Shown: in pieces, positions 3,722 through 40,467 of the stretch
How positions within the stretch are numbered: the first letter of the stretch is position 1
How the letters are laid out: each line of letters begins with the position of its first letter
Virus record (IMG/VR): IMGVR_UViG_3300013233_000235
Location: 124,001-188,000 of that record
Direction: 5' to 3' (one strand)
Length of the DNA: 64,000 bases
Program-made: the position numbers and the translations under genes
The notes under the pieces: generated by a model
The model's input: only the letters and a program-made list of their open reading frames with translations
Told to the model about the DNA's origin: nothing
The model's database searches: none

Positions 3722-3854
3722 TAGACCCCCCGATTAAGGGGGTCTATTCTTTTTATGTAAATCTGGAATCAAGCATATCTCAATGACATATAACTAAAAT
3801 GGATATAGGCGTTTTGACTTATATCACTATGGCTTAACAGCCAGGAGTTTTACT
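3722..3854 (+). promoter_or_regulatory. Early cassette, class II: terminator + CATATAACT (3787-3795) + ATG 3799 + hairpin GATATAGG-CGTTTTGA-CTTATATC (3802-3825) + AGGAG SD
   Basis: Near-identical to 40335-40467. Confidence 0.85.
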
Positions 3855-22600: not shown

Positions 22601-23375
22601 CATCCTAATTGGCACAAGACTTACTACTGACCAGTCGGAGCTGTACGCCGTACTATCAACCGATGATGGGCTAGTCAGCTACATATACAGTTGCGACGAT
22701 GGTACTCTTCGAGAGGGCGCGTTCATTAAACACGTCCGCCCTAAACTGATCCATGATGATCCCGATCATCTGTACAAGGCTATGGCCGTCACTGGTGGGT
22801 GTGTGATCACCCCGGTAGAGAAGGGCATCCTGATTACAGACTTGTCAAATGGCAGGAACGTGGATGTACTCGTAACACCGTCCCCACCGGATGAGATACA
22901 GTTGGCCGGGCCAGGGTACCGCGATATCATTTATACCGGGTCTAGTGGCGAGACTATGGTGTTCGACACTATTGGCCGCACCACCACATCCGTATTCCCC
23001 TCACTGATTGCGCACGCTTTACTCACCGCCGAGGGTGGCTTCCTAGTGGTAGATAAACACGCCGAGGGTGTGTATGACTACATCCCGGCATTCTACGCTG
23101 ATGGTCAACTTATCACTGTACACAGTGCGCTACGTATCCCCGGCGGTGTGTGGGGGCTAAGTGCTGTGACTACCATCGAGTGCGCACATGGCACCACGTT
23201 GGTAATCTACCAGATGTCATCCGTATTCCCGGTAACCCCCTCTATTGTTGTCACCATACCCATTAGTGGTGAAGCCACTATGGAACTCATAATCGATAGC
23301 AATGGGTGCTTTAATAACCTTGTACACGCCGATTCTGGCAAAGACGTTGTAGTAGTTAATGGAGAACCCGTATGA
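22524..23375 (+). CDS. hypothetical beta-propeller-like protein (start uncertain)
   Basis: Long beta-rich ORF; ATGA overlap with the next gene. Confidence 0.6.
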   Translation: MEKLQCAHVDYRQSVLRLKALLPGADILIGTRLTTDQSELYAVLSTDDGLVSYIYSCDDGTLREGAFIKHVRPKLIHDDPDHLYKAMAVTGGCVITPVEKGILITDLSNGRNVDVLVTPSPPDEIQLAGPGYRDIIYTGSSGETMVFDTIGRTTTSVFPSLIAHALLTAEGGFLVVDKHAEGVYDYIPAFYADGQLITVHSALRIPGGVWGLSAVTTIECAHGTTLVIYQMSSVFPVTPSIVVTIPISGEATMELIIDSNGCFNNLVHADSGKDVVVVNGEPV

Positions 23376-24550
23376 GTGAAAACACGTGTATTGAGAAACT
23401 AGAAATACCTGTTAAGGATGATACCGAGTTATCAGCCGCCATGAACCGGCGCGGTGAATGCATGATCGGTACAGAAGACGGTAATATGCGCACCATTTGT
23501 GTACTCCCATACGACGACGATGAAAACGTGGAACTGTGGAGTATCAAAACCGGTGACCCAGTGGTCCGCAGACGGGTGCTGTTCAAGATGGCCGCATTCC
23601 TATCGGATGGGCAAACACTTGTAGACACCCTTATTTACGGGCGATTCTTTGTGGCCATGTCAAAGAACCGTATAACCATCCAGGATGTGCTGCGTCGGGC
23701 GTCCATCTTTGAAGCCGAGCAGGCCGGTGAGAACGTGGCATTAAGGTTGGTTGATGACGACATCGTGGTCTTCACCAGCATCGAGGGGCGCATCGGGGCC
23801 ACACGGATTAATACCACCACTGGTAGCGATTACGCAGTGTACCTACCGAAGCACATCCGTAAACGTCCAAAGGTTTCGCGATGGGTGAGGTGGGTCAAGT
23901 CTAAAGAAGGTATGGCTGAGTTCAAACGCAACTACGCTAAAGGGCCAGACCCTCTTAAAGGGGTGTACACTTTTGACGGAGTAGATGGTAGTGGTAAAAC
24001 CACACTAATCAATTCGTTAAAGGATCATTATACCGACCTTGGTGTCGAGGTTATTGTCTTTAACTGGAAGGACTATTTGAACGAATGGTTGGGTGATACA
24101 ACCACCGAGACCTTAGGGGCTTGTTGGGAAGAGGTAGCCCGCTTGGTGATTGCTTCCCCAGCGGATGCGCTGGTTCTAGTTGATCGATACGCCATGACGA
24201 CAGCCGTTTATCAAGGGGATGACTTTAACACGGGGGTTAGTGACTCTGATGGGGCGTATCAAGTCTACCATGATGCTTACCAACGCATGAACCCCTCTAC
24301 CTCTTTCATCATGGTGGGTGACGTTACAAAGTTTATCGCCCGTAGTACCACCGTTGAAGGGGATGCTAACGGGAATAAGGGGTTAGATTTCTACCAGCGC
24401 GCACAAACAAGTTACATCATGCTCGGTAGTAAAGCGTGGCATAACACCTGCCATATCAATGCCGACAAGCCGGCAGATGAGATCGCAGCGGAGGTACGTA
24501 AAACCATCGATGCATGGTTACAAACCAAAACGGAAAAGGAAGATGTATGA
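23372..24550 (+). CDS. tmk: thymidylate kinase domain fused to a 180-aa N-terminal beta-rich domain
   Basis: P-loop FDGVDGSGKTT and DRY..TT.VYQG TMK motifs in the C-terminal half. Confidence 0.75.
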   Translation: MSENTCIEKLEIPVKDDTELSAAMNRRGECMIGTEDGNMRTICVLPYDDDENVELWSIKTGDPVVRRRVLFKMAAFLSDGQTLVDTLIYGRFFVAMSKNRITIQDVLRRASIFEAEQAGENVALRLVDDDIVVFTSIEGRIGATRINTTTGSDYAVYLPKHIRKRPKVSRWVRWVKSKEGMAEFKRNYAKGPDPLKGVYTFDGVDGSGKTTLINSLKDHYTDLGVEVIVFNWKDYLNEWLGDTTTETLGACWEEVARLVIASPADALVLVDRYAMTTAVYQGDDFNTGVSDSDGAYQVYHDAYQRMNPSTSFIMVGDVTKFIARSTTVEGDANGNKGLDFYQRAQTSYIMLGSKAWHNTCHINADKPADEIAAEVRKTIDAWLQTKTEKEDV

Positions 24551-25771: not shown

Positions 25772-25872
25772 AGCCCCTTCGGGGGCTTTCTTTTTTATTT
25801 GTTTCCATACATTTTCAGAACCATATAACTACTATGAAGAGGCATCTTGATCTCTTACATTGGAGTTTAGTT
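25772..25872 (+). promoter_or_regulatory. Early cassette, class I (CATATAACT 25822-25830, ATG 25834, stem AAGAGG/TCTCTT, loop CATCTTGA)
   Basis: Repeat copy. Confidence 0.85.
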
Positions 25873-26481
25873 ATGAATGACTTATTAATGCGCTTAGTTG
25901 TCACCAGTGGTGTTAAGCTGAGATGTGACCACCGGGTGGTTGCGGTATCGCCCGATCGAGCCTGTACGTGGGCGGCGATACTAACCATTGGGGCTGAACA
26001 CCCCATCCTCCCAACCATGGGTGGTTGGGATAATGTCCACGCCGTCCCACTAGCCACACCCGGTCGGGGGGTGCTAAACGACAACGATGCCACCCGACGG
26101 TTTACCCAGGCGATCGTAGATGGGGTCGGGCGTGGGCACGGGCTTCTATCAGACCGTACACGTGCCATACAGGGCCTCAACATGGGTGTGAGACTGCCGG
26201 AGTTGTTTGAGGGATACATGTGGTCAAAACTGGCCACAAGACATGGGCTGGGTAACAGCCGGGCACTTTTTTACGCTGCATACGGGCTGTGCGAGCGGCA
26301 GGGCGACTGGTGGGAGGTACTGACCCACATGGAAGAGTACCAGCGTAGCGCACGCCAGCTTGTTGGGTTGGCTGGTGTGCGTACAGGGGGGGATCACGGG
26401 CTACTGTATATGAACAGTCGCCCGGAGTTACGAGATGCTGCATTGGACACACTCATCGAGTATGTAAGGGGGGTGAAATGA
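25873..26481 (+). CDS. hypothetical early protein
   Basis: SD-led ATG after the cassette. Confidence 0.75.
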   Translation: MNDLLMRLVVTSGVKLRCDHRVVAVSPDRACTWAAILTIGAEHPILPTMGGWDNVHAVPLATPGRGVLNDNDATRRFTQAIVDGVGRGHGLLSDRTRAIQGLNMGVRLPELFEGYMWSKLATRHGLGNSRALFYAAYGLCERQGDWWEVLTHMEEYQRSARQLVGLAGVRTGGDHGLLYMNSRPELRDAALDTLIEYVRGVK

Positions 26482-27407
26482 GTAGGGTGGTTAAAGAGCA
26501 GTTCGGCCCACTCCACGAGATGTTGCTCGCATCAATGTCATCCCATGGGCGTAACCGGCTGGTAAGTATGACCGGCATGGGTGTGGACGGCACCTGGTGG
26601 GATAGGGTGCTCACAAAGGGCCGTCGCATCACACCAACGAAGTTGTGGTCCTACCTGGATAACGTCTACGATCCCGCAAAGGACCCCTTTACCCCCCGTG
26701 AACTTATTGATGCCGCTATTGAGTGGGACTGGGGGGTAGGGGTAACACCAACCAATGCTGCGGCCACGAGCCCCATCGTTAAGGAGTTCTGGTGGATCAG
26801 GGTTAACCACCACATCAGCACTACCCAGCTGTGTAGGTCCATACACATGTGCTCAAGCCAAGTGTACAACATGGAGTCCGGCGACCGAGGGTGCTCATTA
26901 GAGCACAGCCTGCAACTGGCAGAGGCATTTATAAGCATCGGTGTAAGCAGAGAGTTGGTAGCCGCCGCCATTCTCAGATCTTTCTGCCCAGATCCTCGCC
27001 GTCATGCGCTGATGGGTACCGTGCTGAACATACTGGTTATGAGCCGGTGTACGTTAGCACCACTGCTGCTGATCATGGGTGGGCCTGATCTAACCAGAGC
27101 CCGCTTCCTGACTGGAGAGGGTGTTTCAATAACCACCATTGCGGCATGGACCCGGCATGCTACAAATAAGTATAGAGAGTTACGATCTATACTGGAGACG
27201 GGGGCCGTTGGTAACAGGCAGGTATTGTGGGAGGCACTTATGATGAGGGATGTGCCCCAAGGTGGATTGGCAAAACACCTCGGTACAAACCCACGCCTAT
27301 TTAAATACATGCTAGCCATAGGCCGAGGGGTTGGGGAATTGGATCTCACTCCGATCCAAAATATGCCATTGCGGGACGATGTTATAACGGGGGTTTACGT
27401 ATGCTAA
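26478..27407 (+). CDS. multi-domain XRE-like HTH protein
   Basis: ISTTQLCRSIHMCSSQVYNMESGDR...SLQLAEAF, plus N- and C-terminal HTH-like segments. Confidence 0.65.
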   Translation: MSRVVKEQFGPLHEMLLASMSSHGRNRLVSMTGMGVDGTWWDRVLTKGRRITPTKLWSYLDNVYDPAKDPFTPRELIDAAIEWDWGVGVTPTNAAATSPIVKEFWWIRVNHHISTTQLCRSIHMCSSQVYNMESGDRGCSLEHSLQLAEAFISIGVSRELVAAAILRSFCPDPRRHALMGTVLNILVMSRCTLAPLLLIMGGPDLTRARFLTGEGVSITTIAAWTRHATNKYRELRSILETGAVGNRQVLWEALMMRDVPQGGLAKHLGTNPRLFKYMLAIGRGVGELDLTPIQNMPLRDDVITGVYVC

Positions 27408-27790
27408 ATACGCTGGTTAAGCAGGGGCCGTTCACGGTCCCTACCGGTCTATCGGATAGAGCGCTACTGAGGGTAATATCGGCCAATATACCCCACATCC
27501 CCACCATGCACCGTGACCCCGCCGCAGTGGTGGTGGCATTGGCCATGGTGTGGGGAAGCATGTGCACAGAAGATCGACGAGATCTGTATGCCAACTACAG
27601 GACTGGATTGGACATTTACTTATGTCCAGACGAATACGCTGTCAAAATAAATGGGTTGAAATCACCCATAGTCGCAGCCGAATGCGGTATGTGGGTCAGA
27701 TCACTACCAGCGGATGTCCGCAAACGGCTTACCCACATGGTGAGTAAAGCCATATCGAAATACCGGGCGGATACCCCGCCACCAACATAG
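27401..27790 (+). CDS. hypothetical protein
   Basis: Overlap-coupled ORF. Confidence 0.65.
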   Translation: MLNTLVKQGPFTVPTGLSDRALLRVISANIPHIPTMHRDPAAVVVALAMVWGSMCTEDRRDLYANYRTGLDIYLCPDEYAVKINGLKSPIVAAECGMWVRSLPADVRKRLTHMVSKAISKYRADTPPPT

Positions 27791-27798
27791 GGTGCACA

Positions 27799-28584
27799 TT
27801 GCGTCCCGAGGAGCTAGTAATGATTAAAACTGTAGAAGAACTGAATGAAGTATTGCCCGAGGGCTACCTCGCCGAGATTGGTGAGGGTAGTGGGGATGAC
27901 ACACACCACCAGCTTACCGTGATGAGAGGGGATGCACTGATCATTAAGTATCTGTACAATGCCAACAGGTTCCCTAACATCTGGGTAGATGGGGACTACC
28001 TCGCCATTGTACAAAGCATAGACCGTAGCTGCATCCGGTTCTATCGGTTGGACATGGTGGGACAGGGGATGCTCTACAGCCTCATCTTCACCGGGTATGT
28101 GTTCGAGGTACCCGTGAGTATGTTAGAGGATGTGGTGGCCACTCTACGGGCTTTAGAACTGGCTATAACTGCATACACCCCTGGCTTGGTGGACGTCGAG
28201 TACGCATCTTTGGCGCCGGGGGCATCCGCGATGTTTAAACACATGGCTGTATCAAGGGGGTTCATACAGAAGAACCGTGGGGCAAGGTTGCACAGCGATT
28301 ACTACATCCGTGACCCCGAGAATGGTGTGTCGCTGTATGAGAACACACTTTACCGGGAGGGCCGATGGTTTGGAGAAGGGGAGTACACAACGTTCGACGT
28401 GCGTATGGATGCTACCCGCTGGTCTATCTCTAACAGGATTCGCACAGGCACTGGTAAGAGTATCAGTCAGTGCATCAACGTGTATCGCCCAGAGCTGGCG
28501 CCTGGCCAGGCAGCCATGGTGTCGCTCATAAACGAATCACACATGGTGGAGTTATTAGCTAACTCCACTGTTGTGGTTGCATAG
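27799..28584 (+). CDS. hypothetical protein
   Basis: Long ORF; TTG or downstream ATG start. Confidence 0.65.
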   Translation: MRPEELVMIKTVEELNEVLPEGYLAEIGEGSGDDTHHQLTVMRGDALIIKYLYNANRFPNIWVDGDYLAIVQSIDRSCIRFYRLDMVGQGMLYSLIFTGYVFEVPVSMLEDVVATLRALELAITAYTPGLVDVEYASLAPGASAMFKHMAVSRGFIQKNRGARLHSDYYIRDPENGVSLYENTLYREGRWFGEGEYTTFDVRMDATRWSISNRIRTGTGKSISQCINVYRPELAPGQAAMVSLINESHMVELLANSTVVVA

Positions 28585-28633
28585 TGGGCACGGGGCTTTC
28601 TTAACCGTAAGCCCCATAGCTGTGTATGTGATG

Positions 28634-28733
28634 GCCCCCTCGGGGGCTTTCTTTTTTATTTGTTTCCATACATTTTCAGAACTATATAACTTGTATGAAG
28701 AGACATCTTGATCTCTTGTATAGGAGTTTAGTT
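28634..28733 (+). promoter_or_regulatory. Early cassette, class I (TATATAACT 28683-28691, ATG 28695, loop CATCTTGA)
   Basis: Repeat copy. Confidence 0.85.
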
Positions 28734-29471
28734 ATGAGTAAAATGGTTAACTCGCTTAAGAAGGTGCCCAATACACCACGCAATTTCATGCACGAGGGGC
28801 GCCTTAGAAACCTCTTGGTACATATGCGGGAGTCGGACCCATCCGCTATTACGCCAGAGAACATGTTCGTCATGGCGGACATCCCGGTAGATTTTACCCG
28901 GCTGGCTTTACCCGAGATCCACGCCAGTGGTGCGACCCAGCCGATTTCTATCGCCGCCCTGACACGTCTTATCAACGGTGTCCAAATTGGCCGCATACGG
29001 TCGACAGATGGGTCGTTTGTGGTGGCTGCCTTTCCTAGATGGTATGATTCGGGCGCTGGTGCTATTAGCGTCGCCATATGTGTGGAAGGGGCGACAAATT
29101 CGGCTCTGGATATTAACATTATACATGGTCGGCGTATACTCCATGTTGCATGTGGGCATAAGCGGGCGTGGATAATCACGGATCTGGGTGCATGGCTTGT
29201 AGGCTGGGATGTCGATAGCCAGGGATCTGTACATATCCAGGAAGGGGCGGTACCACTCGGCGATGGGGGCCCATTGTACAACACTCGCATCCAGATGATC
29301 TATAATGCGGATGTGGATGAAGATAACAATCTTACATACACGGCCGTATGCTATAATGGGGGGGAACCAACCGCTGCATACGAGGTCTGCGTATCCCCGA
29401 TGACAGGTCAACACGATGCACCGTCCGATATGAGTGTGTCCGAATTGATGGACACACTTAAAACAAACTAA
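28734..29471 (+). CDS. hypothetical early protein (paralog family B)
   Basis: SD-led ATG; AWIITDLGAWL motif. Confidence 0.75.
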   Translation: MSKMVNSLKKVPNTPRNFMHEGRLRNLLVHMRESDPSAITPENMFVMADIPVDFTRLALPEIHASGATQPISIAALTRLINGVQIGRIRSTDGSFVVAAFPRWYDSGAGAISVAICVEGATNSALDINIIHGRRILHVACGHKRAWIITDLGAWLVGWDVDSQGSVHIQEGAVPLGDGGPLYNTRIQMIYNADVDEDNNLTYTAVCYNGGEPTAAYEVCVSPMTGQHDAPSDMSVSELMDTLKTN

Positions 29472-29481
29472 GGAGTTAGAC

Positions 29482-29886
29482 ATGAACCGAGTAAGCTTAG
29501 TGAGAGCGCTAAAAGAGTTTTGTAAGTCCACGGGCACCAAGCTATCCGATTACGTGGTAGGTGCAGGTGGTGCCATGATGTTGGAGAGTCGCACTTTGCG
29601 CTCCGAAACCGATGATGTGGATGTTGCTACTTCACACCGGGTGTGGGATCTGTTGTACAAGTTACCACACCGGGAAGAGTATTTCGGGGACACTGAGATA
29701 CGTGCCTTTGGCAAAGTGGATGTACACCTGGTTGATAACCCGGTGGTTATTGAAACACTGGTATCAAAAGAGGGTGTCATATATTGGGACCCTGAGACCG
29801 TGCTACGGTTCAAGCAATACCTCAACAGAGATAAGGATCAGAAGGATATAACCGCCCTAAAGAAGTACATCGCTAGTAATAAGTAA
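29482..29886 (+). CDS. minimal nucleotidyltransferase-fold protein (pol beta superfamily)
   Basis: VVGAGGAM...R.ETDDVDV and later DVH motif; AAGGAG SD. Confidence 0.65.
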   Translation: MNRVSLVRALKEFCKSTGTKLSDYVVGAGGAMMLESRTLRSETDDVDVATSHRVWDLLYKLPHREEYFGDTEIRAFGKVDVHLVDNPVVIETLVSKEGVIYWDPETVLRFKQYLNRDKDQKDITALKKYIASNK

Positions 29887-29892
29887 TAAGTC

Positions 29893-29995
29893 AGCCCCTT
29901 CGGGGGCTTTCCTTTTTATTTGTTTCCATCAATTCTTAGAACTATATAACTTGTATGAAGAGACACTTTGATCTCTTATTGTGAAGGATGTTGAT
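29893..29995 (+). promoter_or_regulatory. Early cassette, class I (TATATAACT 29943-29951, ATG 29955, loop CACTTTGA)
   Basis: Repeat copy; SD segment GAAGGATGTTGATATG identical to the 2557 copy. Confidence 0.85.
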
Positions 29996-30088
29996 ATGAG
30001 TAAAGTATGTAAGAACCCCACAGGCCCAAATGGCCGGGTTAGTTACGGACTCGCCCACGGTACCACCCTCTCCAACGAGCCACACTAG
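29996..30088 (+). CDS. 30-aa micro-protein MSKVCKNPTGPNGRVSYGLAHGTTLSNEPH
   Basis: Occupies the first-gene slot of a cassette with a full SD; manual translation. Confidence 0.55.
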   Translation: MSKVCKNPTGPNGRVSYGLAHGTTLSNEPH

Positions 30089-30101
30089 GGATAAAGGCGC
30101 A

Positions 30102-30731
30102 ATGACCAACCATAGGGTTAGCCCCAACTACACACCCCCAGCAACCCCGCTAGGCGATTATCTGCGTGCCGTCATGGCGCACCAGGATATAACCTGGAGG
30201 GGACTTTCCAATCGCGTGGGATGTACACCCATCTCATTGGCCGCCATCGCATCAGGTGAATCCCGCTTTCCGGATGTATCCCAAGAAAACCTTCTGATGT
30301 ATTGTAAACACGTTTACAAAGATAGGTTTTGTAAGGATGCTTGGCGCAGAGCTATGTCCGGCATACCAACGGGTAATAAGGAGGTGCACGCAGCAATGGC
30401 CACCCCTTTGGGGGACGCTATGCGGGAGTTCCGCCGAGAGCATGGGATCACCTATAGCCAGTTCGCCCGCATGTGTGGTATCAATCACACGTACCTGCGG
30501 TCAATCGAGCGTGGTAAAGTGAAACTTAGCTTTGCCAACGGCGTTTATATATCAAAAGGTATACGCGCCAATGGGGACCTAGATGTGGCAGCGACACGCC
30601 TACTTGATTTGGTGTCTAGCACCATGGTGCAACCCACTTACACGGATATGGCTATTAGAATATCCGCCCTTAATGAAACCAAACAACGCAGGCTTTCTGA
30701 CCTGCTACTTAAGTTGGAGACAGAGAAATGA
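30102..30731 (+). CDS. tandem double XRE-HTH protein
   Basis: Two TPLGD..R...H.IT...L/F.R..G.....L..I.SG/RG repeats. Confidence 0.75.
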   Translation: MTNHRVSPNYTPPATPLGDYLRAVMAHQDITWRGLSNRVGCTPISLAAIASGESRFPDVSQENLLMYCKHVYKDRFCKDAWRRAMSGIPTGNKEVHAAMATPLGDAMREFRREHGITYSQFARMCGINHTYLRSIERGKVKLSFANGVYISKGIRANGDLDVAATRLLDLVSSTMVQPTYTDMAIRISALNETKQRRLSDLLLKLETEK

Positions 30732-30970
30732 ATAATGCCGTAACAAGATACATCAAACAGTTCGTACCAATGCATCCCGAGCGGATTTCCAAGATGGGTA
30801 AGGCCATCGGGTGGGATGGTAATGAGCTATACCACTGGCTGCGTGGTGAACGCCCAAACCCATCCTTGGCGTACATGGAGCGGATCTCCCGTTACCTGAG
30901 CCGGGGTAACCCTGAGTTTGAACCAATCCGGTTCGATCAGCTAATAGAAGGAGTGAACAAACGTGATTGA
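30728..30970 (+). CDS. XRE-HTH protein
   Basis: MGKAIGWDGNELYHWLRGERPNPSLAYMERIS. Confidence 0.75.
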   Translation: MNNAVTRYIKQFVPMHPERISKMGKAIGWDGNELYHWLRGERPNPSLAYMERISRYLSRGNPEFEPIRFDQLIEGVNKRD

Positions 30971-31481
30971 GAAAACAGATGTAAGAAAGCTGTGGCTCAT
31001 GGGTCGCATGGCCGGTATGGTTGACACCATCCGTGGTGAGCGGATGGCTGGTAATATACACATACCCATTGGGGAGCATATGCGGGATGGTGTGTACAAG
31101 CACCAGTTTGTGAACGATAAGCTGGTACGGTCCATTGCGCAGATCCGAGCGGTGATATTGGCGGCCTTAGTCGCCCCACCGGCTGAGTACCTGCCGATAC
31201 TGGCACTGCTGAGCCCCGAAAACCCCGTCCCATATGGTAAAGGTTGGCCTGAAGAGTATGCCCCCGTGCATATGGCGGTGCACGGGTGCTACTTACTAAA
31301 CACCCCCCTGCTATTGACCGAATTGGTGGAGGTGGTTACCTACAGCCTCTTCGACATCCCTGATGAAAACATGGATGTGGCCATTGCCGCGATTCGGTCC
31401 TACTACGCTATGGGGGCCACCGGGGAGTCGCTAGCATTGTACGAGGCATTAGAGGTCTATGACACCATCCCAAAAGGGTAG
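30963..31481 (+). CDS. hypothetical protein
   Basis: GTG start with GGAG SD, overlap-coupled. Confidence 0.65.
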   Translation: MIEKTDVRKLWLMGRMAGMVDTIRGERMAGNIHIPIGEHMRDGVYKHQFVNDKLVRSIAQIRAVILAALVAPPAEYLPILALLSPENPVPYGKGWPEEYAPVHMAVHGCYLLNTPLLLTELVEVVTYSLFDIPDENMDVAIAAIRSYYAMGATGESLALYEALEVYDTIPKG

Positions 31482-31488
31482 ATGCACA

Positions 31489-31728
31489 TTGCCCCCAACC
31501 TCACCATGTGGTGCATGGTTGGATAAGCGTGTACGTGAGGGGGTGATAACTAGGGGCCAGTGGGTGGCTGCACTACCCATCGCGTATGGTACCTGGAGGA
31601 AGATCGAACTGGGTCGTATCCCCATTACCGAGGCGACAGCCATGCGCCTACAGCGGACTGTTATACGTGTGTTGGGTCACGACCACTTAGATAGTTGGTG
31701 GGGTTGTGTTAACACACACCCGCTGTAA
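31489..31728 (+). CDS. XRE-HTH protein (probable TTG start)
   Basis: TRGQWVAALPIAYGTWRKIELGRIPITEATAMRL. Confidence 0.6.
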   Translation: MPPTSPCGAWLDKRVREGVITRGQWVAALPIAYGTWRKIELGRIPITEATAMRLQRTVIRVLGHDHLDSWWGCVNTHPL

Positions 31729-31742
31729 ATTGCGGCATAACA

Positions 31743-31849
31743 AGACTCCCTTAATCGGGAGTCTTTCTTTTTTATTTGTTTCCATACATTCTTAAGACTA
31801 TATAACTTGTATGAAGAGACGCATTGATCTCTTGTATAGGAGTTTAGTT
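31743..31849 (+). promoter_or_regulatory. Early cassette, class I (TATATAACT 31799-31807, ATG 31811, loop CGCATTGA)
   Basis: Repeat copy. Confidence 0.85.
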
Positions 31850-32392
31850 ATGAACGAAGAATTATCTAAAGCGTGTGCATCCATAGCGGATACCCCGCAG
31901 TTGGAATTGACATTTGATGTCAACCGCATTAGCGGTATGCCCGATGGGACAAGTGCCAATATCTTGTCACGATTGTTGGGTGTTCCGCTATCATTCCTAA
32001 CTGCGGTTGCCGGGGTGAGTTGCAAGAAAGCCGCTCTGGCGAATATTTGCACAGCAGTAACACGCCCCGGCCTATCGGTGGTATACGCCGTACGGGGCGG
32101 TACACTGCATGTACAATTCTTGGTTGCTGGGGAGTACGAGCATCTACGGATAGATGCCCCTGAGGATCCCATTCTAGGCATGGGGGTGTCGGGGTTAACC
32201 GCATGGGTGGTTACCACACAGGGTGTCTACAAACACCAGTTGAATGACTTCGAGCCCCCGCAAGTGTTTACATACCCTATAACGGGTATAACGGGCATGG
32301 CGGTAAGTGGTACGGGGATCATCATTGATGTCTTGCTGCCCGACGGTGTTGAGCGATCAATGCATCTGCGTGTGGAGGCCGATAGTGAATAA
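31850..32392 (+). CDS. hypothetical early protein (paralog family B)
   Basis: AWVVTTQGVYK motif. Confidence 0.75.
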   Translation: MNEELSKACASIADTPQLELTFDVNRISGMPDGTSANILSRLLGVPLSFLTAVAGVSCKKAALANICTAVTRPGLSVVYAVRGGTLHVQFLVAGEYEHLRIDAPEDPILGMGVSGLTAWVVTTQGVYKHQLNDFEPPQVFTYPITGITGMAVSGTGIIIDVLLPDGVERSMHLRVEADSE

Positions 32393-33008
32393 GTCCATAT
32401 TAATGGTCTGCGACCCCAAGATCTTTGCTGTGCAGGATCGGTATCTGGTAACCAGACCTGACAGACCCTGTACGTGGAGAACACTGCATCGGCTGGCCCG
32501 CACTTACCCAATCGTTGACAGATACCTAAGTGTTGGGTGCCTGCTGCCAAATCCTGCCCCACACCGCCGTAGCAAGTTCATAGACGAAGGCACCGCCGAA
32601 CTGTACGGCATTATCGCAGACTATGTGGCCAGTGGGTACGCCCACTATAAGTTCGGAGTAGAGGTCGCCAAACACCTGCGCGCCACCACATGTGTGCAGA
32701 GCATGAGTGGTACGCTGAACTGGCTGGCTATCTTACCACACGTCTATCCGGAGTTACGCCCACTTGTGTTAAAGATACATGGCTTGGATGGGTTAGATAG
32801 CGTTATGGTTGCTAAGGCCGTGCGGTTAGCTATAAGCATATCTAAGTACAGGCACCGCCGGACCACCTATTCCGAGGTATACGGAATAACGCCAGCAAAC
32901 GAACGACAGTTGTTCAGCAGAGGATACACCTGCAAACATAAAGAAAAGATTATATCTAACCTAAAAGAGGGGGGCGAGTTATGGGATACATCATCGGTTC
33001 TATGGTAA
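32385..33008 (+). CDS. hypothetical protein (paralog family C, HTH-like C-terminus)
   Basis: GTG start with GGAGG SD; aligns by eye with 33721 and 35144. Confidence 0.7.
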   Translation: MNKSILMVCDPKIFAVQDRYLVTRPDRPCTWRTLHRLARTYPIVDRYLSVGCLLPNPAPHRRSKFIDEGTAELYGIIADYVASGYAHYKFGVEVAKHLRATTCVQSMSGTLNWLAILPHVYPELRPLVLKIHGLDGLDSVMVAKAVRLAISISKYRHRRTTYSEVYGITPANERQLFSRGYTCKHKEKIISNLKEGGELWDTSSVLW

Positions 33009-33721
33009 AGAGGCTACGGGAAGTACAAGGGCTATCTGTAAAGGGCATGGCCCTCTTATACGGGGTTGGTCACCAAAGTCTCCGTAATGCCGAACACGGG
33101 GTTTACTCGCTAACCCCGGATGCTTTCCAAAGTATCGCAATGGCTAGCGAGGAAGTGTATGCTAAAGCGGGGTTTACAAGGGCAGAGATGGCCACTGCCG
33201 CTGCTGACATGTACCTGGCTAGACACCGTGAAGTCATGAAAGACTTCTCATCGAAGAAGGTTGGGCCACGTAAAGAGTATAAGGTGCTGTTACGTAACGC
33301 TCGCCTGAATGGACACATATCGTCAACGCTGCTAGCCCAAGAAATGGGCATAACCCCATACAACTTCGGTCAGTTGGAATGCGCGGGGAGATCTGTTAAG
33401 GGCCCCATGTTACACCGATGGTTATTAGCACTTGAACAATACCAGTGTGAGCGGCCCGTGCTTATAGAGATAGTGGCTGCCAGATATGGGATCTCTATAA
33501 GTATAGCTGGGGAGGTGTTCAACCAGATATACAGTGCTATCCTGGCCAGCGGTATCACCACCCAACGGTACCTTAAAGAAACGGGTACCCGGTCAACTAC
33601 GCTACAGGTGCTGAATGTGCACCGCAGGGTGATGTGGAACATGTGCATGGCCCACAATCGGTGGGTGGACGATAATGGTTTATTAGGCGATAGTTGTAAA
33701 ATAAATATGGAGGAGCTATAA
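32981..33721 (+). CDS. multi-domain XRE-HTH protein
   Basis: VKRLREVQGLSVKGMALLYGVGHQSLRNAEHG and LRNARLNGHISSTLLAQEMGITPYNFGQLE. Confidence 0.75.
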   Translation: MGYIIGSMVKRLREVQGLSVKGMALLYGVGHQSLRNAEHGVYSLTPDAFQSIAMASEEVYAKAGFTRAEMATAAADMYLARHREVMKDFSSKKVGPRKEYKVLLRNARLNGHISSTLLAQEMGITPYNFGQLECAGRSVKGPMLHRWLLALEQYQCERPVLIEIVAARYGISISIAGEVFNQIYSAILASGITTQRYLKETGTRSTTLQVLNVHRRVMWNMCMAHNRWVDDNGLLGDSCKINMEEL

Positions 33722-34389
33722 TGAACATTGGTTTACAACGGGCGCTGGCAGGGTCCATAACGGGTGTGGTCAGCGAGACTGCCCGGCGCGCCATACAGCG
33801 GGACGATGCATCTTGCAGTTGGTACACAATGCGTAGACTGGCCCTACTGCATCCGCAGGTTGGTACAGCACTCAACCTTAACAGGCTGCTACCCACGGTC
33901 ATTCGCAACACCACCTCGCAGACGGTGTGTGATAACACCGGGGAGTTCTACAGCGAGATCAGTACACGGCTTAAGATAACACATGCAGACCACCCTGATC
34001 TGGAGGCGTGTCTGCGCCACCTGGGTACAGACACGCTGAGACCGCACCCTGCCGATGCGATCAACTGGGTAAATATGCGTTACTCACCTGGGCACCTGTG
34101 GACCCTATTTGGCAAGATGTACGGACTAGGCGAGTTATCTACCCACCATCTGAAGCAAGCTGTGTGGCTGGCTGCCGCCCTGGGCACGTACACGGTTCTG
34201 CCCAAAGATTACACGGCAATGTATGGGCTCACCAACCGTGAGGTCAGTTCGGTATTCTCCATTGGGCGAGGGACTAGAGAAAAGTTGGCGGCCCTGGATA
34301 AATGGTCCCAGGTGTCTCCACGGGTCTCAGCCCATGGGGACCTGCCCATATTAACGCACTGGCTGATGTTATTGCAACTACACTCGTAA
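33721..34389 (+). CDS. hypothetical protein (paralog family C)
   Basis: GGAG SD; family motifs. Confidence 0.7.
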   Translation: MNIGLQRALAGSITGVVSETARRAIQRDDASCSWYTMRRLALLHPQVGTALNLNRLLPTVIRNTTSQTVCDNTGEFYSEISTRLKITHADHPDLEACLRHLGTDTLRPHPADAINWVNMRYSPGHLWTLFGKMYGLGELSTHHLKQAVWLAAALGTYTVLPKDYTAMYGLTNREVSSVFSIGRGTREKLAALDKWSQVSPRVSAHGDLPILTHWLMLLQLHS

Positions 34390-34448
34390 CAAACAAATCT
34401 GGGTATACTACCCTAACTAACGCCGCAGATGCGGCAAGGATATTGACT

Positions 34449-35147
34449 ATGGAAAACCAAAGAATAGAAGCAGTTGAAACCAATGCGGCAATTTTAGAGG
34501 TCATGTTAAACTGCGGGTATGACCCCACCTACAGTCACGACATGGCCGCAGGCCGGGTGACATTGGCCGACGCGACATTGGCCCGCATACACGCGGAGGA
34601 CCACCGTATACCCGCCCCCCTCCGCCGTATTGTCGGCGGGATTGACGAGCTGGTAGATCAGGAGCTGAATAGATTGGGGCACACGGCGGTCTCAGTGGAA
34701 GCCAATCTTGGCAAAGGCCTATGCTATTGGGCCGGATGGAAATATAGGTATGTCAAAAGTGGTCAACGTATGTATCACGCACCAGCCCCCGTGGACATGT
34801 TGCTAGAGGCACACAGGATGTCTGGGGAGGCTGTGGATACCGGCTTACTGAAAGCCGTGCTCACAGTGGACGTATACAGCGACCGAGTGCAACGTATGGC
34901 TGTGGCGGCCACGATGTTCCGGACGGCCTACACACTGTCTCATCCAGAGATGGCTGTGGCTGTAGGGTTGGAAAGGCCCGAGCTAGGGCGCTACCTATGT
35001 ATGGGTGGGGATGAGTCGGGTGTACTGTTAGATGCGTCCAAGACGTTTTATCGGTACATGTGGACTCACCGGGTTAAGCTTGGCGAGCTCGTCCCCGACT
35101 GGCTCAACCCTGTTGATTTCAACAGCGCTTATGGTGAATCGATATGA
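34449..35147 (+). CDS. hypothetical protein with C-terminal HTH-like segment
   Basis: AAGGA SD before ATG 34449; FRTAYTLSHPEMAVAVGLERPELGRY. Confidence 0.65.
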   Translation: MENQRIEAVETNAAILEVMLNCGYDPTYSHDMAAGRVTLADATLARIHAEDHRIPAPLRRIVGGIDELVDQELNRLGHTAVSVEANLGKGLCYWAGWKYRYVKSGQRMYHAPAPVDMLLEAHRMSGEAVDTGLLKAVLTVDVYSDRVQRMAVAATMFRTAYTLSHPEMAVAVGLERPELGRYLCMGGDESGVLLDASKTFYRYMWTHRVKLGELVPDWLNPVDFNSAYGESI

Positions 35148-35737
35148 ATGAGTTGCTGACGAAGGTCTTGGGTGACCGCCAGCTAAACTTGACCCCGTCT
35201 GAAGAGAGGGCTATTTATACACCCGGCGTCGGTATGAGCTGGATAAGTCTTGGCAGGATTATCACCAATAACCCCATCCTGATGGGGCAGGGCTATTACG
35301 CCCATCTGTCAGCTGTACACTGCGATCCAAAAACATGCGTGTTAGTGGGTGGGGATGAGATGTCTACGGCTCTGGCTATCTCGATGAAAGAGTTAGCTAC
35401 CTATGGTGATTCCACGTCATTGGATAACCATAAGTACTTCCTATCCAGGGGTGCCAAGCCTACTGGCATCATGGCGAGCTTGTGGATATACCACTTAGAG
35501 CGACATGGCATAACCAGTGCATCAGCGCTGTACAGAGAGGTGTATGGCCTAGATAAGCAACAGGCTAAGGCGGCGTGCGAGCTTGTCTGGGTGACCACCA
35601 TGCGTGGGAGGACGGTCAGCAGGATCGCCAGCTATGCGGGTTACCGCGCCAAAGAGGTTTCCCAACTATGGGTGGTTGGGGCAAAGTCGTCCAAGAAGGA
35701 TGAGGTAATCCACCGTTTACGGGAACTCATGGGGTAG
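35144..35737 (+). CDS. hypothetical protein (paralog family C)
   Basis: ATGA-coupled; family motifs. Confidence 0.7.
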   Translation: MNELLTKVLGDRQLNLTPSEERAIYTPGVGMSWISLGRIITNNPILMGQGYYAHLSAVHCDPKTCVLVGGDEMSTALAISMKELATYGDSTSLDNHKYFLSRGAKPTGIMASLWIYHLERHGITSASALYREVYGLDKQQAKAACELVWVTTMRGRTVSRIASYAGYRAKEVSQLWVVGAKSSKKDEVIHRLRELMG

Positions 35738-35757: not shown

Positions 35758-35856
35758 AGCCCTTCGGGGCTTTCTTTTTTATTTGTTTCCCTATATTCTT
35801 AGAACTATATAACTTGTATGAAGAGACACTTTGATCTCTTGTATAGGAGTTTAGTT
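35758..35856 (+). promoter_or_regulatory. Early cassette, class I (TATATAACT 35806-35814, ATG 35818, loop CACTTTGA)
   Basis: Repeat copy. Confidence 0.85.
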
Positions 35857-36444
35857 ATGAGCGATTTTCTGACACACAGGTGTCACATGTTAAGTACACG
35901 CACCACCACCGGGGGGTCCGAGATGACCACCATCGACGGCCTTGATCTACCACGGGCGGTTAACGTAGGCGGGCATATTGAGTTGAAGAGAGGGGGTGTT
36001 ACATATCGCACTGATAAGCATCCGCCTTGGAAGCCCTTTACAGTGTTGTCAAGCTCGGGACGCCACGCCAACGGGGTATTGTTGGAAATGCACTGCGGGT
36101 GCGATGGCACATACCCGTATGTCCTGTTTATCGATGGTCGGTGCCACGTACTAGGTAAACATTTTGGTGACATCCCAGAGAATGGTTGCGTGTTTGAACA
36201 GGGTCTCTGGATGTACGGCCATGGTCTTCTAGACTACCATGAGTCTGTGGTTATAGCCATCGGTGAGTACACCGGCACCAAACCTAAGCGGCAGCTCAAC
36301 TACAAGGTAATTGCAATGGATACCCCCAAACAAGAGTTCGTAATAGAGATTATACCCAATGCTGAAAATAGCATTGTGTATCAATTGCGGGTAACCCTGC
36401 CAGCGTGGGGTCCCCGCGCACAAGTGATACAACGCGTTAAGTAA
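35857..36444 (+). CDS. hypothetical early protein (paralog family A)
   Basis: SD-led; TIDGLDLP...GGHIEL motif. Confidence 0.75.
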   Translation: MSDFLTHRCHMLSTRTTTGGSEMTTIDGLDLPRAVNVGGHIELKRGGVTYRTDKHPPWKPFTVLSSSGRHANGVLLEMHCGCDGTYPYVLFIDGRCHVLGKHFGDIPENGCVFEQGLWMYGHGLLDYHESVVIAIGEYTGTKPKRQLNYKVIAMDTPKQEFVIEIIPNAENSIVYQLRVTLPAWGPRAQVIQRVK

Positions 36445-36475: not shown

Positions 36476-36907
36476 ATGAAAAACGAACAAGCATTAAAAG
36501 ACAAATTGCTGTATGTTAAAGCGGAGTCCGTAAAAACGATCTCCTCCACGTTCGCCAATGGGGATCGTATCAGTCATCTGGAGGTGGACGGCATGCATAT
36601 CCAGGGGCTGGATGGGTCGTCCGACGGGCGGATCGGGTGGAGTGACGGCGTCAACACATGGGTGAGCCAGCCATACCCGCTTTACCATAAAGCGGTCGGT
36701 GGACCCCAACGCTGCGGTGGGGGGCACAACCACATTGGGGTTATACTCCGCGTAAGGGATGGTGGTAGACGTCATCGGCTGTGCCTAGTTTACCGTGGCG
36801 CTGTGTACTACACTGGCGGGCTGGTTAAGAAAACCGGTGATGACATCCTATTCAAGAACCTACTTTGGGTTGGTGGTGTGGGTCCACGGCCAGTGCCCCA
36901 GTCGTGA
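36476..36907 (+). CDS. hypothetical protein (paralog family A)
   Basis: AGGAG SD; VDGMHIQG...GRIGWSDG motif. Confidence 0.75.
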   Translation: MKNEQALKDKLLYVKAESVKTISSTFANGDRISHLEVDGMHIQGLDGSSDGRIGWSDGVNTWVSQPYPLYHKAVGGPQRCGGGHNHIGVILRVRDGGRRHRLCLVYRGAVYYTGGLVKKTGDDILFKNLLWVGGVGPRPVPQS

Positions 36908-37485
36908 GCCAGTCGGAGTGGATGACACCCTACCAATCATTCCTGATAAGTGTCTCCCCCCAACCCCCCGATGGTGACATTATCTGCATTGATGGGCATC
37001 CCCTGCCCAATATAGGGCGTGTCGGCAACGGGTTAACCCTGGACATATCCGGTGAGCCATGGGTGACGGGTCCCCACCCGCCGTACGTGATGCTCAATGG
37101 GGTGCCAGGTGGCATCGCCATCGTATTGGTGTTCCGATGTGATGATCTTGGCACGATGGTCATCGTTGATAAAGGCGGCCCGGTTATAATGGGGAGGTTA
37201 GTCAGGGAGGTCCCCGCGTGTGGTCCAAATGGCACAATTGTTTGTGAGCAGCGTGTGTGGTTACACGGCTTGGGGCACACCGACCTACACGGGCAGCTAA
37301 AGAAAGCCGTTAAATACACCCGGACGTGGGATGCGATCTGCATTAGCACAGCCAACGTCAAGTCTGAGTGGGTTATCACAGCCACCAGGGGTTGGCCCAC
37401 CAATCCCGACGTAGTGGATAACCCATGGGAGCCAACGTATCTGTGCCGTTGGGAAGATGCCCACTGGGCATTTGCACGTATGTAA
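36904..37485 (+). CDS. hypothetical protein (paralog family A)
   Basis: GTGA overlap (alternative ATG 36922); IDGHPLP...GNGLTL motif. Confidence 0.7.
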   Translation: MSQSEWMTPYQSFLISVSPQPPDGDIICIDGHPLPNIGRVGNGLTLDISGEPWVTGPHPPYVMLNGVPGGIAIVLVFRCDDLGTMVIVDKGGPVIMGRLVREVPACGPNGTIVCEQRVWLHGLGHTDLHGQLKKAVKYTRTWDAICISTANVKSEWVITATRGWPTNPDVVDNPWEPTYLCRWEDAHWAFARM

Positions 37486-40334: not shown

Positions 40335-40467
40335 TAGACCCCCTATTAAGGGGTCTATTCTTTTTATGTAAATCTGGAATCAACGTATTTTCAATGACAT
40401 ATAACTAAAATGGATATAGGCGTTTTGACTTATATCTATTAATGGCTTAACAGCCAGGAGTTTTACT
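40335..40467 (+). promoter_or_regulatory. Early cassette, class II (CATATAACT 40398-40406, ATG 40410, hairpin GATATAGG-CGTTTTGA-CTTATATC 40413-40436)
   Basis: Near-identical to 3722-3854. Confidence 0.85.

What the first reader, a model, noticed from the sequence alone, without database searches (positions are those of the whole stretch)
26478..35147. Cluster of at least six XRE-type HTH proteins under the cassette promoters: candidate readers of the hairpin
Seen: HTH-like segments in 26478 (about three), 30102 (two), 30728, 31489, 32981 (two or more) and 34449, all in operons driven by the cassette. This is a large number for a phage whose core genes point to a lytic phiKZ-like lifestyle with its own RNAPs. 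Established: the anti-CRISPR-associated HTH Aca2 represses both by binding DNA and by binding a conserved 5'-UTR RNA stem-loop. Inference: some of these HTHs may bind the CNNNUUGA hairpin, giving feedback shut-off of early genes at the RNA level. That would suit a phage whose DNA is shielded from cytoplasmic proteins. They could instead target host promoters or act as decoys for XRE antitoxins or defence regulators.
Basis: partly seen in the sequence, partly recalled or inferred. Interest (0 to 1): 0.72.

Follow-up and report, generated by a model that had tools for sequence, protein, structure and literature searches.

The report
Early XRE-type HTH gene cluster
A very divergent nucleus-forming jumbo phage carries, in three neighbouring early operons, four to five fast-evolving Cro/C1 (XRE)-type DNA-binding proteins, some with two HTH units per chain; this is more than in related phages but a known kind of gene, and nothing yet links them to the leader RNA hairpin.

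Summary
Two proteins pass curated Pfam cut-offs: 30102-30731 (its N- and C-halves are a duplicated HTH) and 32981-33721. Two more (26478-27407, 30728-30970) have sub-threshold HTH_31/HTH_3 matches. In a six-frame scan of the whole 204-kb genome, every HTH_3/HTH_31 match at E<=10 falls in this one 6.4-kb stretch, in frame. 31459-31728 is probable: weak similarity to the HTH of 30102 and language-model features, but its AF2 model gave no HTH fold. 34449-35147 is a strict ORFan with no usable evidence. "About three" units in 26478 and a third in 32981 are not supported.

All six genes lie in operons bounded by the terminator-promoter-hairpin cassette. The genome encodes a chimallin homologue.

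The hairpin-reader idea could not be tested. The hairpin is weak, shows no covariation and does not cover the ribosome-binding site. Six divergent readers for one invariant target is unparsimonious.

The only studied chimallivirus XRE protein, RAY gp094, binds host DNA. My best reading is early cytoplasmic host-DNA binders for host takeover (confidence about 0.4). This is a new member of a known kind, of moderate interest.

The parts
25772..25875 (+). Cassette A: terminator hairpin plus T-run, AT-rich promoter box (25817-25837), leader hairpin (25837-25856), GGAG, ATG 25873. Drives operon A (25873, 26478, 27401, 27820).
26478..27407 (+). 309-aa all-helical ORFan. One credible XRE-type unit at residues about 98-161 (26769-26960). 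A second weak unit at residues 250-273 (27225-27296). Claimed units 1 and 3 are unsupported.
29893..29997 (+). Cassette C: terminator, promoter box 29938-29958, leader hairpin 29958-29977. Its ATG (29995) opens a 30-aa sORF (29995-30087) ahead of 30102.
30102..30731 (+). 209-aa protein (ORF open from 30030) with two Cro/C1-type HTH units: N unit 30150-30272 and C unit 30408-30536. A C-terminal helical tail follows.
30728..30970 (+). 80-aa protein, probably a single XRE-type HTH (30791-30898), sub-threshold.
31459..31728 (+). 89-aa protein (alternative start TTG 31489), probably an HTH at residues 15-70 (31501-31668). Supported only by weak similarity to the HTH of 30102 and by language-model features.
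31742..31852 (+). Cassette D: terminator, promoter box 31794-31814, hairpin 31814-31833, ATG 31850. Drives operon D (31850, 32385, 32981, 33721, 34449, 35144).
32981..33721 (+). 246-aa protein with an N-terminal HTH_3 unit (32996-33139) above the Pfam cut-off. A possible second unit lies at residues 104-133 (33290-33379).
34449..35147 (+). 232-aa strict ORFan; the HTH claim is not confirmed. It holds the same position (after a family-A gene) as 26478 and 32981.
28633..28736 (+). Cassette B. Drives operon B (28734, 29482), which has no HTH gene.
35758..35859 (+). Cassette E. Its terminator closes operon D.

Best explanation
**What it is (shown)**
- This is a real cluster of four, probably five, highly diverged Cro/C1 (XRE)-type helix-turn-helix proteins.
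- At least one has two HTH units in one chain.
- They are encoded in three consecutive operons. Each operon is bracketed by the phage's 23-copy terminator / AT-rich promoter / leader cassette.
- The phage is a singleton, chimallin-encoding, phiKZ-like jumbo phage.

**How it likely works (inferred)**
- The cassette box is the early promoter read by the injected virion RNAP.
- The proteins would therefore be made in the cytoplasm in the first minutes of infection, while the phage genome is enclosed.
- They would bind the only accessible DNA, the host chromosome.
- There they would silence or re-programme host transcription, possibly including stress or defence operons normally held by XRE repressors.
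- Tandem units would let one chain, or an oligomer, read extended or asymmetric sites.
- The ORFan state and extreme divergence fit an accessory, host-specific, fast-evolving role rather than core regulation of the phage's own genes.
For: **Identity of the proteins**
- Searches support the HTH assignments.
- The HTH signals are confined to this stretch of the genome.

**Operon structure and promoter**
- Operon structure and sigma-70 promoter depletion (9 found against 15.7 +/- 3.8 in shuffles) come.
- An AT-rich, roughly 10-nt box as a jumbo-phage early promoter is described in PMC7598289.

**Phage type**
- Chimallin and RNAP homologues are present, and the capsid is phiKZ-like.

**Precedent**
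- RAY gp094, an accessory XRE protein of a chimallivirus, stays cytoplasmic and coats host DNA like H-NS (PMC10299810).
- Group 1 jumbo phages carry cro/cI-type TFs that may modulate host transcription (PMC7824862).

**Rapid evolution**
- All four proteins searched are ORFans.

**Count compared with other phages**
- The same six-frame scan finds 0-2 proteins in phiKZ, RAY, Xoo-sp14 and Yong MS32.
- Yong MS32 has a 234-aa multi-HTH ORF.
Against: - No binding, localisation or timing data exist for this phage.
- The host is unknown, so no host operator could be sought.
- 'Early' rests on analogy of the promoter box with other jumbo phages.
- Sequence alone cannot exclude import into the phage nucleus or RNA binding.
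- Only two proteins pass curated thresholds. The weaker ones could have lost nucleic-acid binding.
Confidence: 0.4

Rival explanations
1. Cassette autoregulation, the reader's idea and its DNA twin. One of the HTH proteins binds the conserved AAGAGR-N8-TCTCTT element found in 21 cassettes. It could bind it as an RNA stem-loop at the 5' end of early mRNAs, or as an inverted-repeat operator just downstream of the start site. Either way it would shut early expression off globally.
For: - The element is near-invariant and has a conserved loop, CNNNTTGA.
- Three copies carry A-to-G, which keeps a G.U pair in RNA.
- The HTH genes sit under the promoters they would control.
- Aca2 and Aca1 show that HTH_3-type proteins can bind both an operator and a 5'-UTR hairpin (PMC13551039).
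- The duplicated HTH in 30102 could read the two arms of an inverted repeat.
Against: - The hairpin is weak, with a z-score near 0 against shuffles.
- There is no covariation and no Rfam match.
- The hairpin ends before the SD, so RBS occlusion as in Aca2 is not evident.
- Five or six unalignable proteins are not needed for one invariant site.
- A 5'-terminal hairpin has simpler roles, such as mRNA stabilisation or a promoter-proximal element.
- Operator binding on DNA needs access to enclosed phage DNA.
- The complex prediction was not folded.
Confidence: 0.2
2. Anti-defence decoys or mimics. The proteins imitate host XRE-family antitoxins or defence-operon repressors (HigA/HipB/MqsA-like, CapH/DdrO-like, R-M C proteins). 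They would either hold defence promoters shut or titrate partner toxins and peptidases.
For: - The C module of 30102 (residues 99-206) aligns to the whole PADLOC capH model (E 8.7e-8) and to R-M control-protein models.
- NCBIfam gives weak hits to HipB, HigA and MqsA-type antitoxins.
- The genes are early, accessory and fast-evolving.
Against: - The capH model rings in 14 of 14 control genomes, so the match is generic XRE similarity.
- No partner peptidase or toxin gene lies in the operons.
- All antitoxin hits are far below their curated cut-offs.
Confidence: 0.15
3. Phage-nucleus transcription factors. The proteins are imported and act with the non-virion RNAP to time middle and late genes, or to silence early promoters on replicated DNA.
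For: - Iyer et al. suggest that group 1 jumbo phages may deploy their own TFs with their RNAPs (PMC7824862).
- The determinants of middle-promoter recognition in phiKZ are unknown (PMC7598289).
Against: - Core regulators would be expected to be conserved among chimalliviruses, but these are ORFans.
- They have no tblastn match in 50,697 phage records.
- The studied XRE protein of RAY is excluded from the nucleus (PMC10299810).
Confidence: 0.15
4. Partial artefact. Only 30102 and 32981 are functional HTH proteins. The other 'HTH-like segments' are helical ORFan sequence that matches a loose pattern by eye.
For: - 34449 has no signal.
- Units 1 and 3 of 26478 and unit 3 of 32981 are at background.
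- AF2 models of 26478 (pLDDT 38) and 31459 (pLDDT 65) gave no HTH fold.
Against: - The sub-threshold Pfam places are confined to this stretch and lie in frame.
- Six of 14 candidate units score at or above 13.9 in hhalign. None of 23 windows from neighbouring non-HTH proteins does, and about 3% of null windows do.
- Atlas features point to HTH for 26478 and 31459.
Confidence: 0.1

Closest known systems
Erwinia chimallivirus RAY gp094 (accessory XRE-superfamily regulator; PMC10299810)
   Same: Both are Cro/C1-type HTH proteins encoded by a chimallin-encoding jumbo phage. Both are accessory rather than core genes. gp094 is detected by the same HTH_3/HTH_31 scan (40.4 bits).
   Different: - gp094 is a single 100-aa, single-HTH protein. 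Here there are 4-5 proteins of 80-309 aa, at least one with a duplicated HTH.
- No sequence similarity is detectable.
- Host-DNA localisation has been shown for gp094 only.
Aca2 / Aca1 anti-CRISPR-associated HTH autoregulators (PMC13551039, PMC6765145)
   Same: Both are HTH_3-class proteins encoded in the operon downstream of a conserved promoter and 5'-UTR stem-loop. Dual DNA and RNA binding would be possible in principle.
   Different: - No acr gene has been identified here.
- The element is repeated at 21 operons, not only at the regulator's own.
- The inverted repeat lies downstream of the promoter box, and the hairpin does not cover the RBS.
- The hairpin is weak.
- Binding has not been tested.
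R-M controller (C) proteins, SinR, ClgR, HipB, DdrO, CapH: small bacterial XRE repressors
   Same: These are the best sequence neighbours of the C-terminal HTH of 30102. Like CapH and DdrO, 30102 has an HTH followed by a short helical tail.
   Different: - 30102 carries an extra N-terminal HTH duplicate.
- There is no partner peptidase, toxin or R-M gene.
- The capH match is non-specific.
Tandem-HTH XRE proteins: Wmk of prophage WO, and the 234-aa multi-HTH ORF of Vibrio phage vB_VmeM-Yong MS32
   Same: These have two or more Cro/C1-type units in one 200-300-aa chain. The Atlas structural neighbour list of 26478 includes Wmk. The Yong ORF has two HTH_3 places in one frame.
   Different: - The TM-score is only 0.31.
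- Smith-Waterman z-scores against the Yong ORF are at or below 2.4.
- The spacing between units differs.

Membership tests
Cro/C1 (XRE) HTH, Pfam HTH_3 PF01381 / HTH_31 PF13560 | Profile match above the curated gathering score | tested here: met
   - 30102: 37.4 and 38.5 bits.
- 32981: 24.8 bits against a cut-off of 23.
- Not met by 26478 (17.3), 30728 (18.0), 31459 (none) or 34449 (none).
Cro/C1 (XRE) HTH, Pfam HTH_3 PF01381 / HTH_31 PF13560 | Five-helix bundle fold, with helices 2 and 3 forming the HTH | tested here: inconclusive
   - Single-sequence AF2 of 26478 gave pLDDT 38.
- AF2 of 31459 gave pLDDT 65 with four long helices and no HTH neighbours.
- The ESM Atlas model of 26478 (pLDDT 0.58) has HTH_3 neighbours at TM 0.23-0.33.
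- No homologues exist from which to build alignments.
Cro/C1 (XRE) HTH, Pfam HTH_3 PF01381 / HTH_31 PF13560 | Sequence-specific nucleic-acid binding | not testable with these tools
   The complex job with the leader RNA was returned NOT FOLDED.
Aca2-type dual DNA/RNA-binding autoregulator | Regulator encoded in the operon it controls, next to an anti-CRISPR gene | tested here: not met
   The genes lie in cassette-driven operons, but no neighbouring gene has any known family and no acr is recognisable.
Aca2-type dual DNA/RNA-binding autoregulator | Conserved 5'-UTR stem-loop whose binding occludes the RBS | tested here: inconclusive
   - The stem-loop is conserved in 21 copies but weak, with z about 0.
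- There is no covariation.
- It ends 5-8 nt upstream of GGAG.
- There is no Rfam match.
Aca2-type dual DNA/RNA-binding autoregulator | Inverted-repeat operator overlapping the promoter | tested here: not met
   The only inverted repeat in the cassette, apart from the terminator, is the hairpin itself. It lies downstream of the AT-rich box.
CapH/DdrO-type cleavable defence repressor | HTH plus C-terminal dimerisation helices, with an adjacent CapP/IrrE metallopeptidase | tested here: not met
   - The capH model match has E 8.7e-8 over model positions 3-99.
- The same model rings in 14 of 14 control genomes.
- No peptidase domain occurs in the operons.
Chimalliviridae-like (nucleus-forming) phage, as context | Chimallin shell protein, split multisubunit RNAPs and a phiKZ-type capsid | tested here: met
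   - phrog_4795 (nuclear shell protein) E 2e-20 at G000:71476-72681.
- An RNAP beta fragment and phrog_2943.
- MCP phrog_3231 E 1e-80, about 27% identical to jumbo phages.
- No tubulin or PhuZ by PF00091; some chimalliviruses also lack it (PMC11724907).

The most novel reading that the evidence does not exclude
One of these early HTH proteins (30102, with its duplicated HTH, is the best candidate) recognises the conserved AAGAGR-CNNNUUGA-UCUCUU element at the 5' end of all 21 early transcripts. It would thereby switch off, stabilise or route the whole early regulon at the RNA level. This would be an Aca2-like RNA-binding HTH scaled up to a genome-wide temporal switch, in a phage whose DNA is inaccessible to cytoplasmic proteins.
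Probability: 0.1. Interest if true: 0.75.

Novelty: new member of a known kind. Interest (0 to 1): 0.35.

Why it matters
- Nucleus-forming phages separate their DNA from the cytoplasm. What their cytoplasmic DNA-binding-type proteins do is therefore an open question.
- This is a compact set of early XRE proteins, some with tandem HTH units, in a phage lineage with no sequenced relatives.
- It is a convenient test set for three alternatives: host-nucleoid takeover, mimicry of defence regulators, or RNA-level control of a 21-copy leader.
- XRE-type factors are already documented in jumbo phages (median 2 TFs, range 1-15). One is already known to bind host DNA. The cluster itself is therefore not a surprise.

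Tried and rejected
**Searches for relatives**
- Close relatives were sought with 32981, 26478 and the RNAP subunit in IMG/VR; none was found.
- The cassette pattern gave none in IMG/VR.
- It gave four single chance matches in metagenomes. Their tblastx against the genome printed no hit and no error message, and I did not confirm that tblastx is installed there.
- megablast and tblastn against 50,697 phage records found nothing.
- Comparative genomics and covariation across phages were therefore impossible.

**Protein-database searches**
- 32981, 30102 and 26478 (5.8 billion proteins) and 34449 (1.84 billion representatives, exhaustive) returned only themselves.

**Structure**
- AF2 without alignments gave 26478 pLDDT 38 and 31459 pLDDT 65.
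- Foldseek PDB and Atlas searches of the 31459 model gave no HTH. I treat this as inconclusive, not negative.

**Own profile tests**
- A five-unit seed HMM scan of all genome ORFs and sliding windows brought no extra unit to significance after multiple testing.
- hhalign with empirical nulls gave only collective support.

**Other attempts**
- Complex prediction with three HTH proteins plus the leader RNA was NOT FOLDED and counts as no evidence.
- The CapH-like reading of 30102 was rejected as specific because the model hits every control genome.
- The family-A paralogues (25873, 32385, 33721, 35144) gave nothing meaningful against PDB.
- No sequencing run was listed.
- Rfam found nothing.
- Single-sequence phiKZ gp54 did not find chimallin; the PHROG profile did.

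Full report
**Context**

The window is bases 124001-188000 of a 204,041-bp IMG/VR virus record with direct terminal repeats.

- Its major capsid protein matches the phiKZ-type capsid family (phrog_3231, E 1e-80). It is only about 27% identical to the nearest sequenced jumbo phages, the Vibrio phage Yong group.
- The genome encodes a chimallin homologue (phrog_4795 'nuclear shell protein', E 2e-20). A single-sequence search with phiKZ gp54 had missed it.
- It also encodes split RNAP subunits.
- No tubulin was found. That is compatible with a nucleus-forming phage (PMC11724907).

The premise of a phiKZ-like, nucleus-forming phage is therefore supported by homology. No closer relative exists in the collections searched.

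**The cassette**

A unit of about 110 nt is repeated 23 times in the genome, always on the + strand. In order, it contains:

- a G+C-rich terminator hairpin and a T-run;
- an invariant AT-rich box (CTATATAACT);
- in 21 copies, AAGAGR-CNNNTTGA-TCTCTT;
- GGAG and ATG.

Strong + strand terminators in 25-38 kb occur only at cassette starts. Sigma-70-like promoters are depleted there, 9 against 15.7 +/- 3.8 in shuffles.

Jumbo-phage early promoters are about 10-nt AT-rich motifs centred near -10 (PMC7598289). By that analogy, which is an inference, transcripts would start just before AAGAGA, and the stem-loop would sit at the extreme 5' end of the mRNA.

The stem-loop is modest:

- It has 6 bp and an 8-nt loop, at -5 to -8 kcal/mol, with z-scores of -0.65 to +0.8 against shuffles.
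- The 21 copies show no compensatory change. Three copies have A-to-G, which would keep a G.U pair.
- It ends 5-8 nt before the SD.
- There is no Rfam match.

**Operons in the finding**

| Operon | Genes |
|---|---|
| A | 25873, 26478, 27401, 27820 |
| B | 28734, 29482 |
| C | 30-aa sORF 29995-30087, 30102, 30728, 30963, 31459 |
| D | 31850, 32385, 32981, 33721, 34449, 35144 |

The Atlas record also starts at 34449. All six candidate genes are indeed under cassettes.

**The HTH claim, protein by protein**

- **30102.** The C-terminal unit passes the Pfam cut-offs (HTH_3 37.4 bits, HTH_31 38.5 bits). It matches PHROG repressor families and PDB XRE repressors (C.AhdI, C.BclI, SinR, ClgR, HipB, DdrO). 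The N-terminal half is a duplicate of the C-terminal half, in register with the HTH (E 6e-5; HTH_31 12.4 bits). The source's gene call is only 125 aa and hides this N-terminal unit.
- **32981.** The N-terminal HTH_3 scores 24.8 bits against a cut-off of 23. It is related to 30102 (Smith-Waterman z 6.05).
- **26478.** The central unit is sub-threshold (HTH_31 17.3 bits; PADLOC HTH_VI E 0.0075). The ESM Atlas neighbours, by features and by structure, are all HTH_3 clusters, including the tandem-HTH Wmk.
- **30728.** HTH_31 scores 18.0 bits, E 0.0038; the six-frame scan gives E 0.001.
- **31459.** There is no profile hit. It is similar to the HTH of 30102 (z 4.4, 0 of 150 shuffles; hhalign over 56 columns in register, empirical p 0.024). 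Atlas features score 0.93-0.94 to HTH_3 clusters. The AF2 model (pLDDT 65) showed four long helices and no HTH neighbours, which I read as inconclusive.
- **34449.** There is nothing in any library. ESM pLDDT is 0.36. Only itself is found among 1.84 billion representatives. Two hhalign segments reach p about 0.025.

**Is it more than chance?**

A six-frame scan of the whole genome with HTH_3 and HTH_31 at E<=10 returns only the five units above. All lie within 6.4 kb, on the + strand, in frame.

I also compared candidate units with a profile of those five units:

- Six of 14 further candidate units score at or above 13.9 in hhalign.
- About 3% of 288 null windows reach that score, and none of 23 windows from neighbouring non-HTH proteins does.
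- Composition-matched shuffles reach the observed score 0-2 times in 35.

This gives collective, not individual, support for extra units at 26478 residues 250-273 and 32981 residues 104-133. It gives none for 26478 units 1 and 3 or for 32981 unit 3.

**How unusual is the number?**

| Phage | Result of the same scan at E<=1 |
|---|---|
| phiKZ | one place |
| RAY | one place (gp094) |
| Xoo-sp14 | none |
| Vibrio phage Yong MS32 | one 234-aa ORF with two places, plus one weak hit in another ORF |
| This phage | four proteins |

This phage is at the high end. Even so, 92% of jumbo phages encode their own transcription factors (median 2, range 1-15), and cro/cI-type HTHs are noted in phiKZ-like group 1 (PMC7824862).

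**Function**

All four proteins searched are ORFans, so function can only be argued from class, timing and compartment. Three observations bear on it:

- The only chimallivirus XRE protein studied, RAY gp094, is an accessory protein. It stays outside the phage nucleus and decorates host DNA like H-NS (PMC10299810).
- Five or six mutually unalignable proteins are not what one expects for readers of a single invariant element.
- The hairpin lacks the hallmarks of a structured regulatory RNA and does not cover the RBS.

I therefore rank host-DNA binding for host takeover first, at about 0.4.

The alternatives are:

- Cassette autoregulation, on RNA or DNA, remains possible for one member (about 0.2). 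Aca2 and Aca1 are valid precedents for RNA binding by HTH proteins (PMC13551039).
- The defence-regulator mimic idea rests on a capH-model hit that proved non-specific.
- A role inside the phage nucleus is disfavoured because the proteins are not conserved.

**Verdict**

This is a real but smaller and less certain cluster than claimed: two proteins certain, two credible, one probable, one unsupported. Its operon context was described correctly. The functional link to the hairpin is untested and, on indirect grounds, not the leading explanation. It is a new member of a known kind.

Noticed in passing
window 25873-26481, 32385-33008, 33721-34389, 35144-35737: Four paralogues of an unknown family: 32307 vs 33721 BLASTP E 2e-12; 25834 vs 32307 E 5e-5; invariant W, P, W, L, GL, G. 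They alternate with the large HTH or candidate-HTH genes in the order A-26478, A-32981, A-34449, A. This suggests duplication of a two-gene module. It is also the only, weak, argument that 34449 is a diverged sibling of 26478 and 32981. No Pfam, PHROG or PDB match.
   Followed up: partly
window 29995-30087: In operon C the cassette's start codon opens only a 30-aa ORF (MSKVCKNPTG...). The HTH gene 30102 follows it in another frame, with a weak AAGG SD. This could be a leader peptide or translational coupling. All other cassettes run directly into a full-length gene.
   Followed up: partly
window 26478-27407 residues 194-262, and 30963-31481 residues 100-172: The two ORFans share a 73-residue segment at 28.8% identity (Smith-Waterman z 4.4, 1 of 150 shuffles). 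30963 may therefore carry one of the helical units of 26478.
   Followed up: no
window 29482-29886: A 134-aa protein with a sub-threshold match to DUF6036, a nucleotidyltransferase of unknown function (E 9e-4, 19.5 bits against a cut-off of 23.6).
   Followed up: no
window 8843 and 40859; also 3728-3825 and 40339-40436: Two cassette copies keep the promoter box but lack the leader hairpin. A second, different 98-nt intergenic repeat (89% identical pair) carries a variant box, ATGACATATAACTAAAATGG, and its own downstream conserved 30-mer.
   Followed up: no
window 57131-58009 (- strand ORF 56992-59598, 868 aa): Degenerate repeats with spacings in multiples of 12 nt, most often 60 nt, lie inside a large minus-strand ORF. 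They would give a repetitive protein segment, possibly a fibre or decoration protein.
   Followed up: no
window 20154-20279: Three tandem 42-nt repeats, two of them identical, encode DETGGGEPDDTNPP-like units at the 3' end of the 813-aa virion structural gene 17847-20288.
   Followed up: no
L012:1483-2187 (-), Vibrio phage vB_VmeM-Yong MS32: The phage with the best capsid match encodes a 234-aa ORF with two HTH_3 places in one frame, and by eye a third HTH-like unit. Tandem XRE arrays therefore also occur in a related jumbo phage. It has no significant similarity to the proteins here.
   Followed up: partly
window 23372-24550: A 392-aa protein whose C-terminal half matches thymidylate kinase / P-loop NTPase (PF02223, E 5.6e-11). 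It lies just upstream of the early-operon block.
   Followed up: no
window 35857-36444 and 36865-37485; 28734-29471 and genome 202304-203071: Two further ORFan paralogue pairs lie in cassette-driven operons (BLASTP E 4e-7 and 5e-15). The early region is rich in lineage-specific duplications.
   Followed up: no
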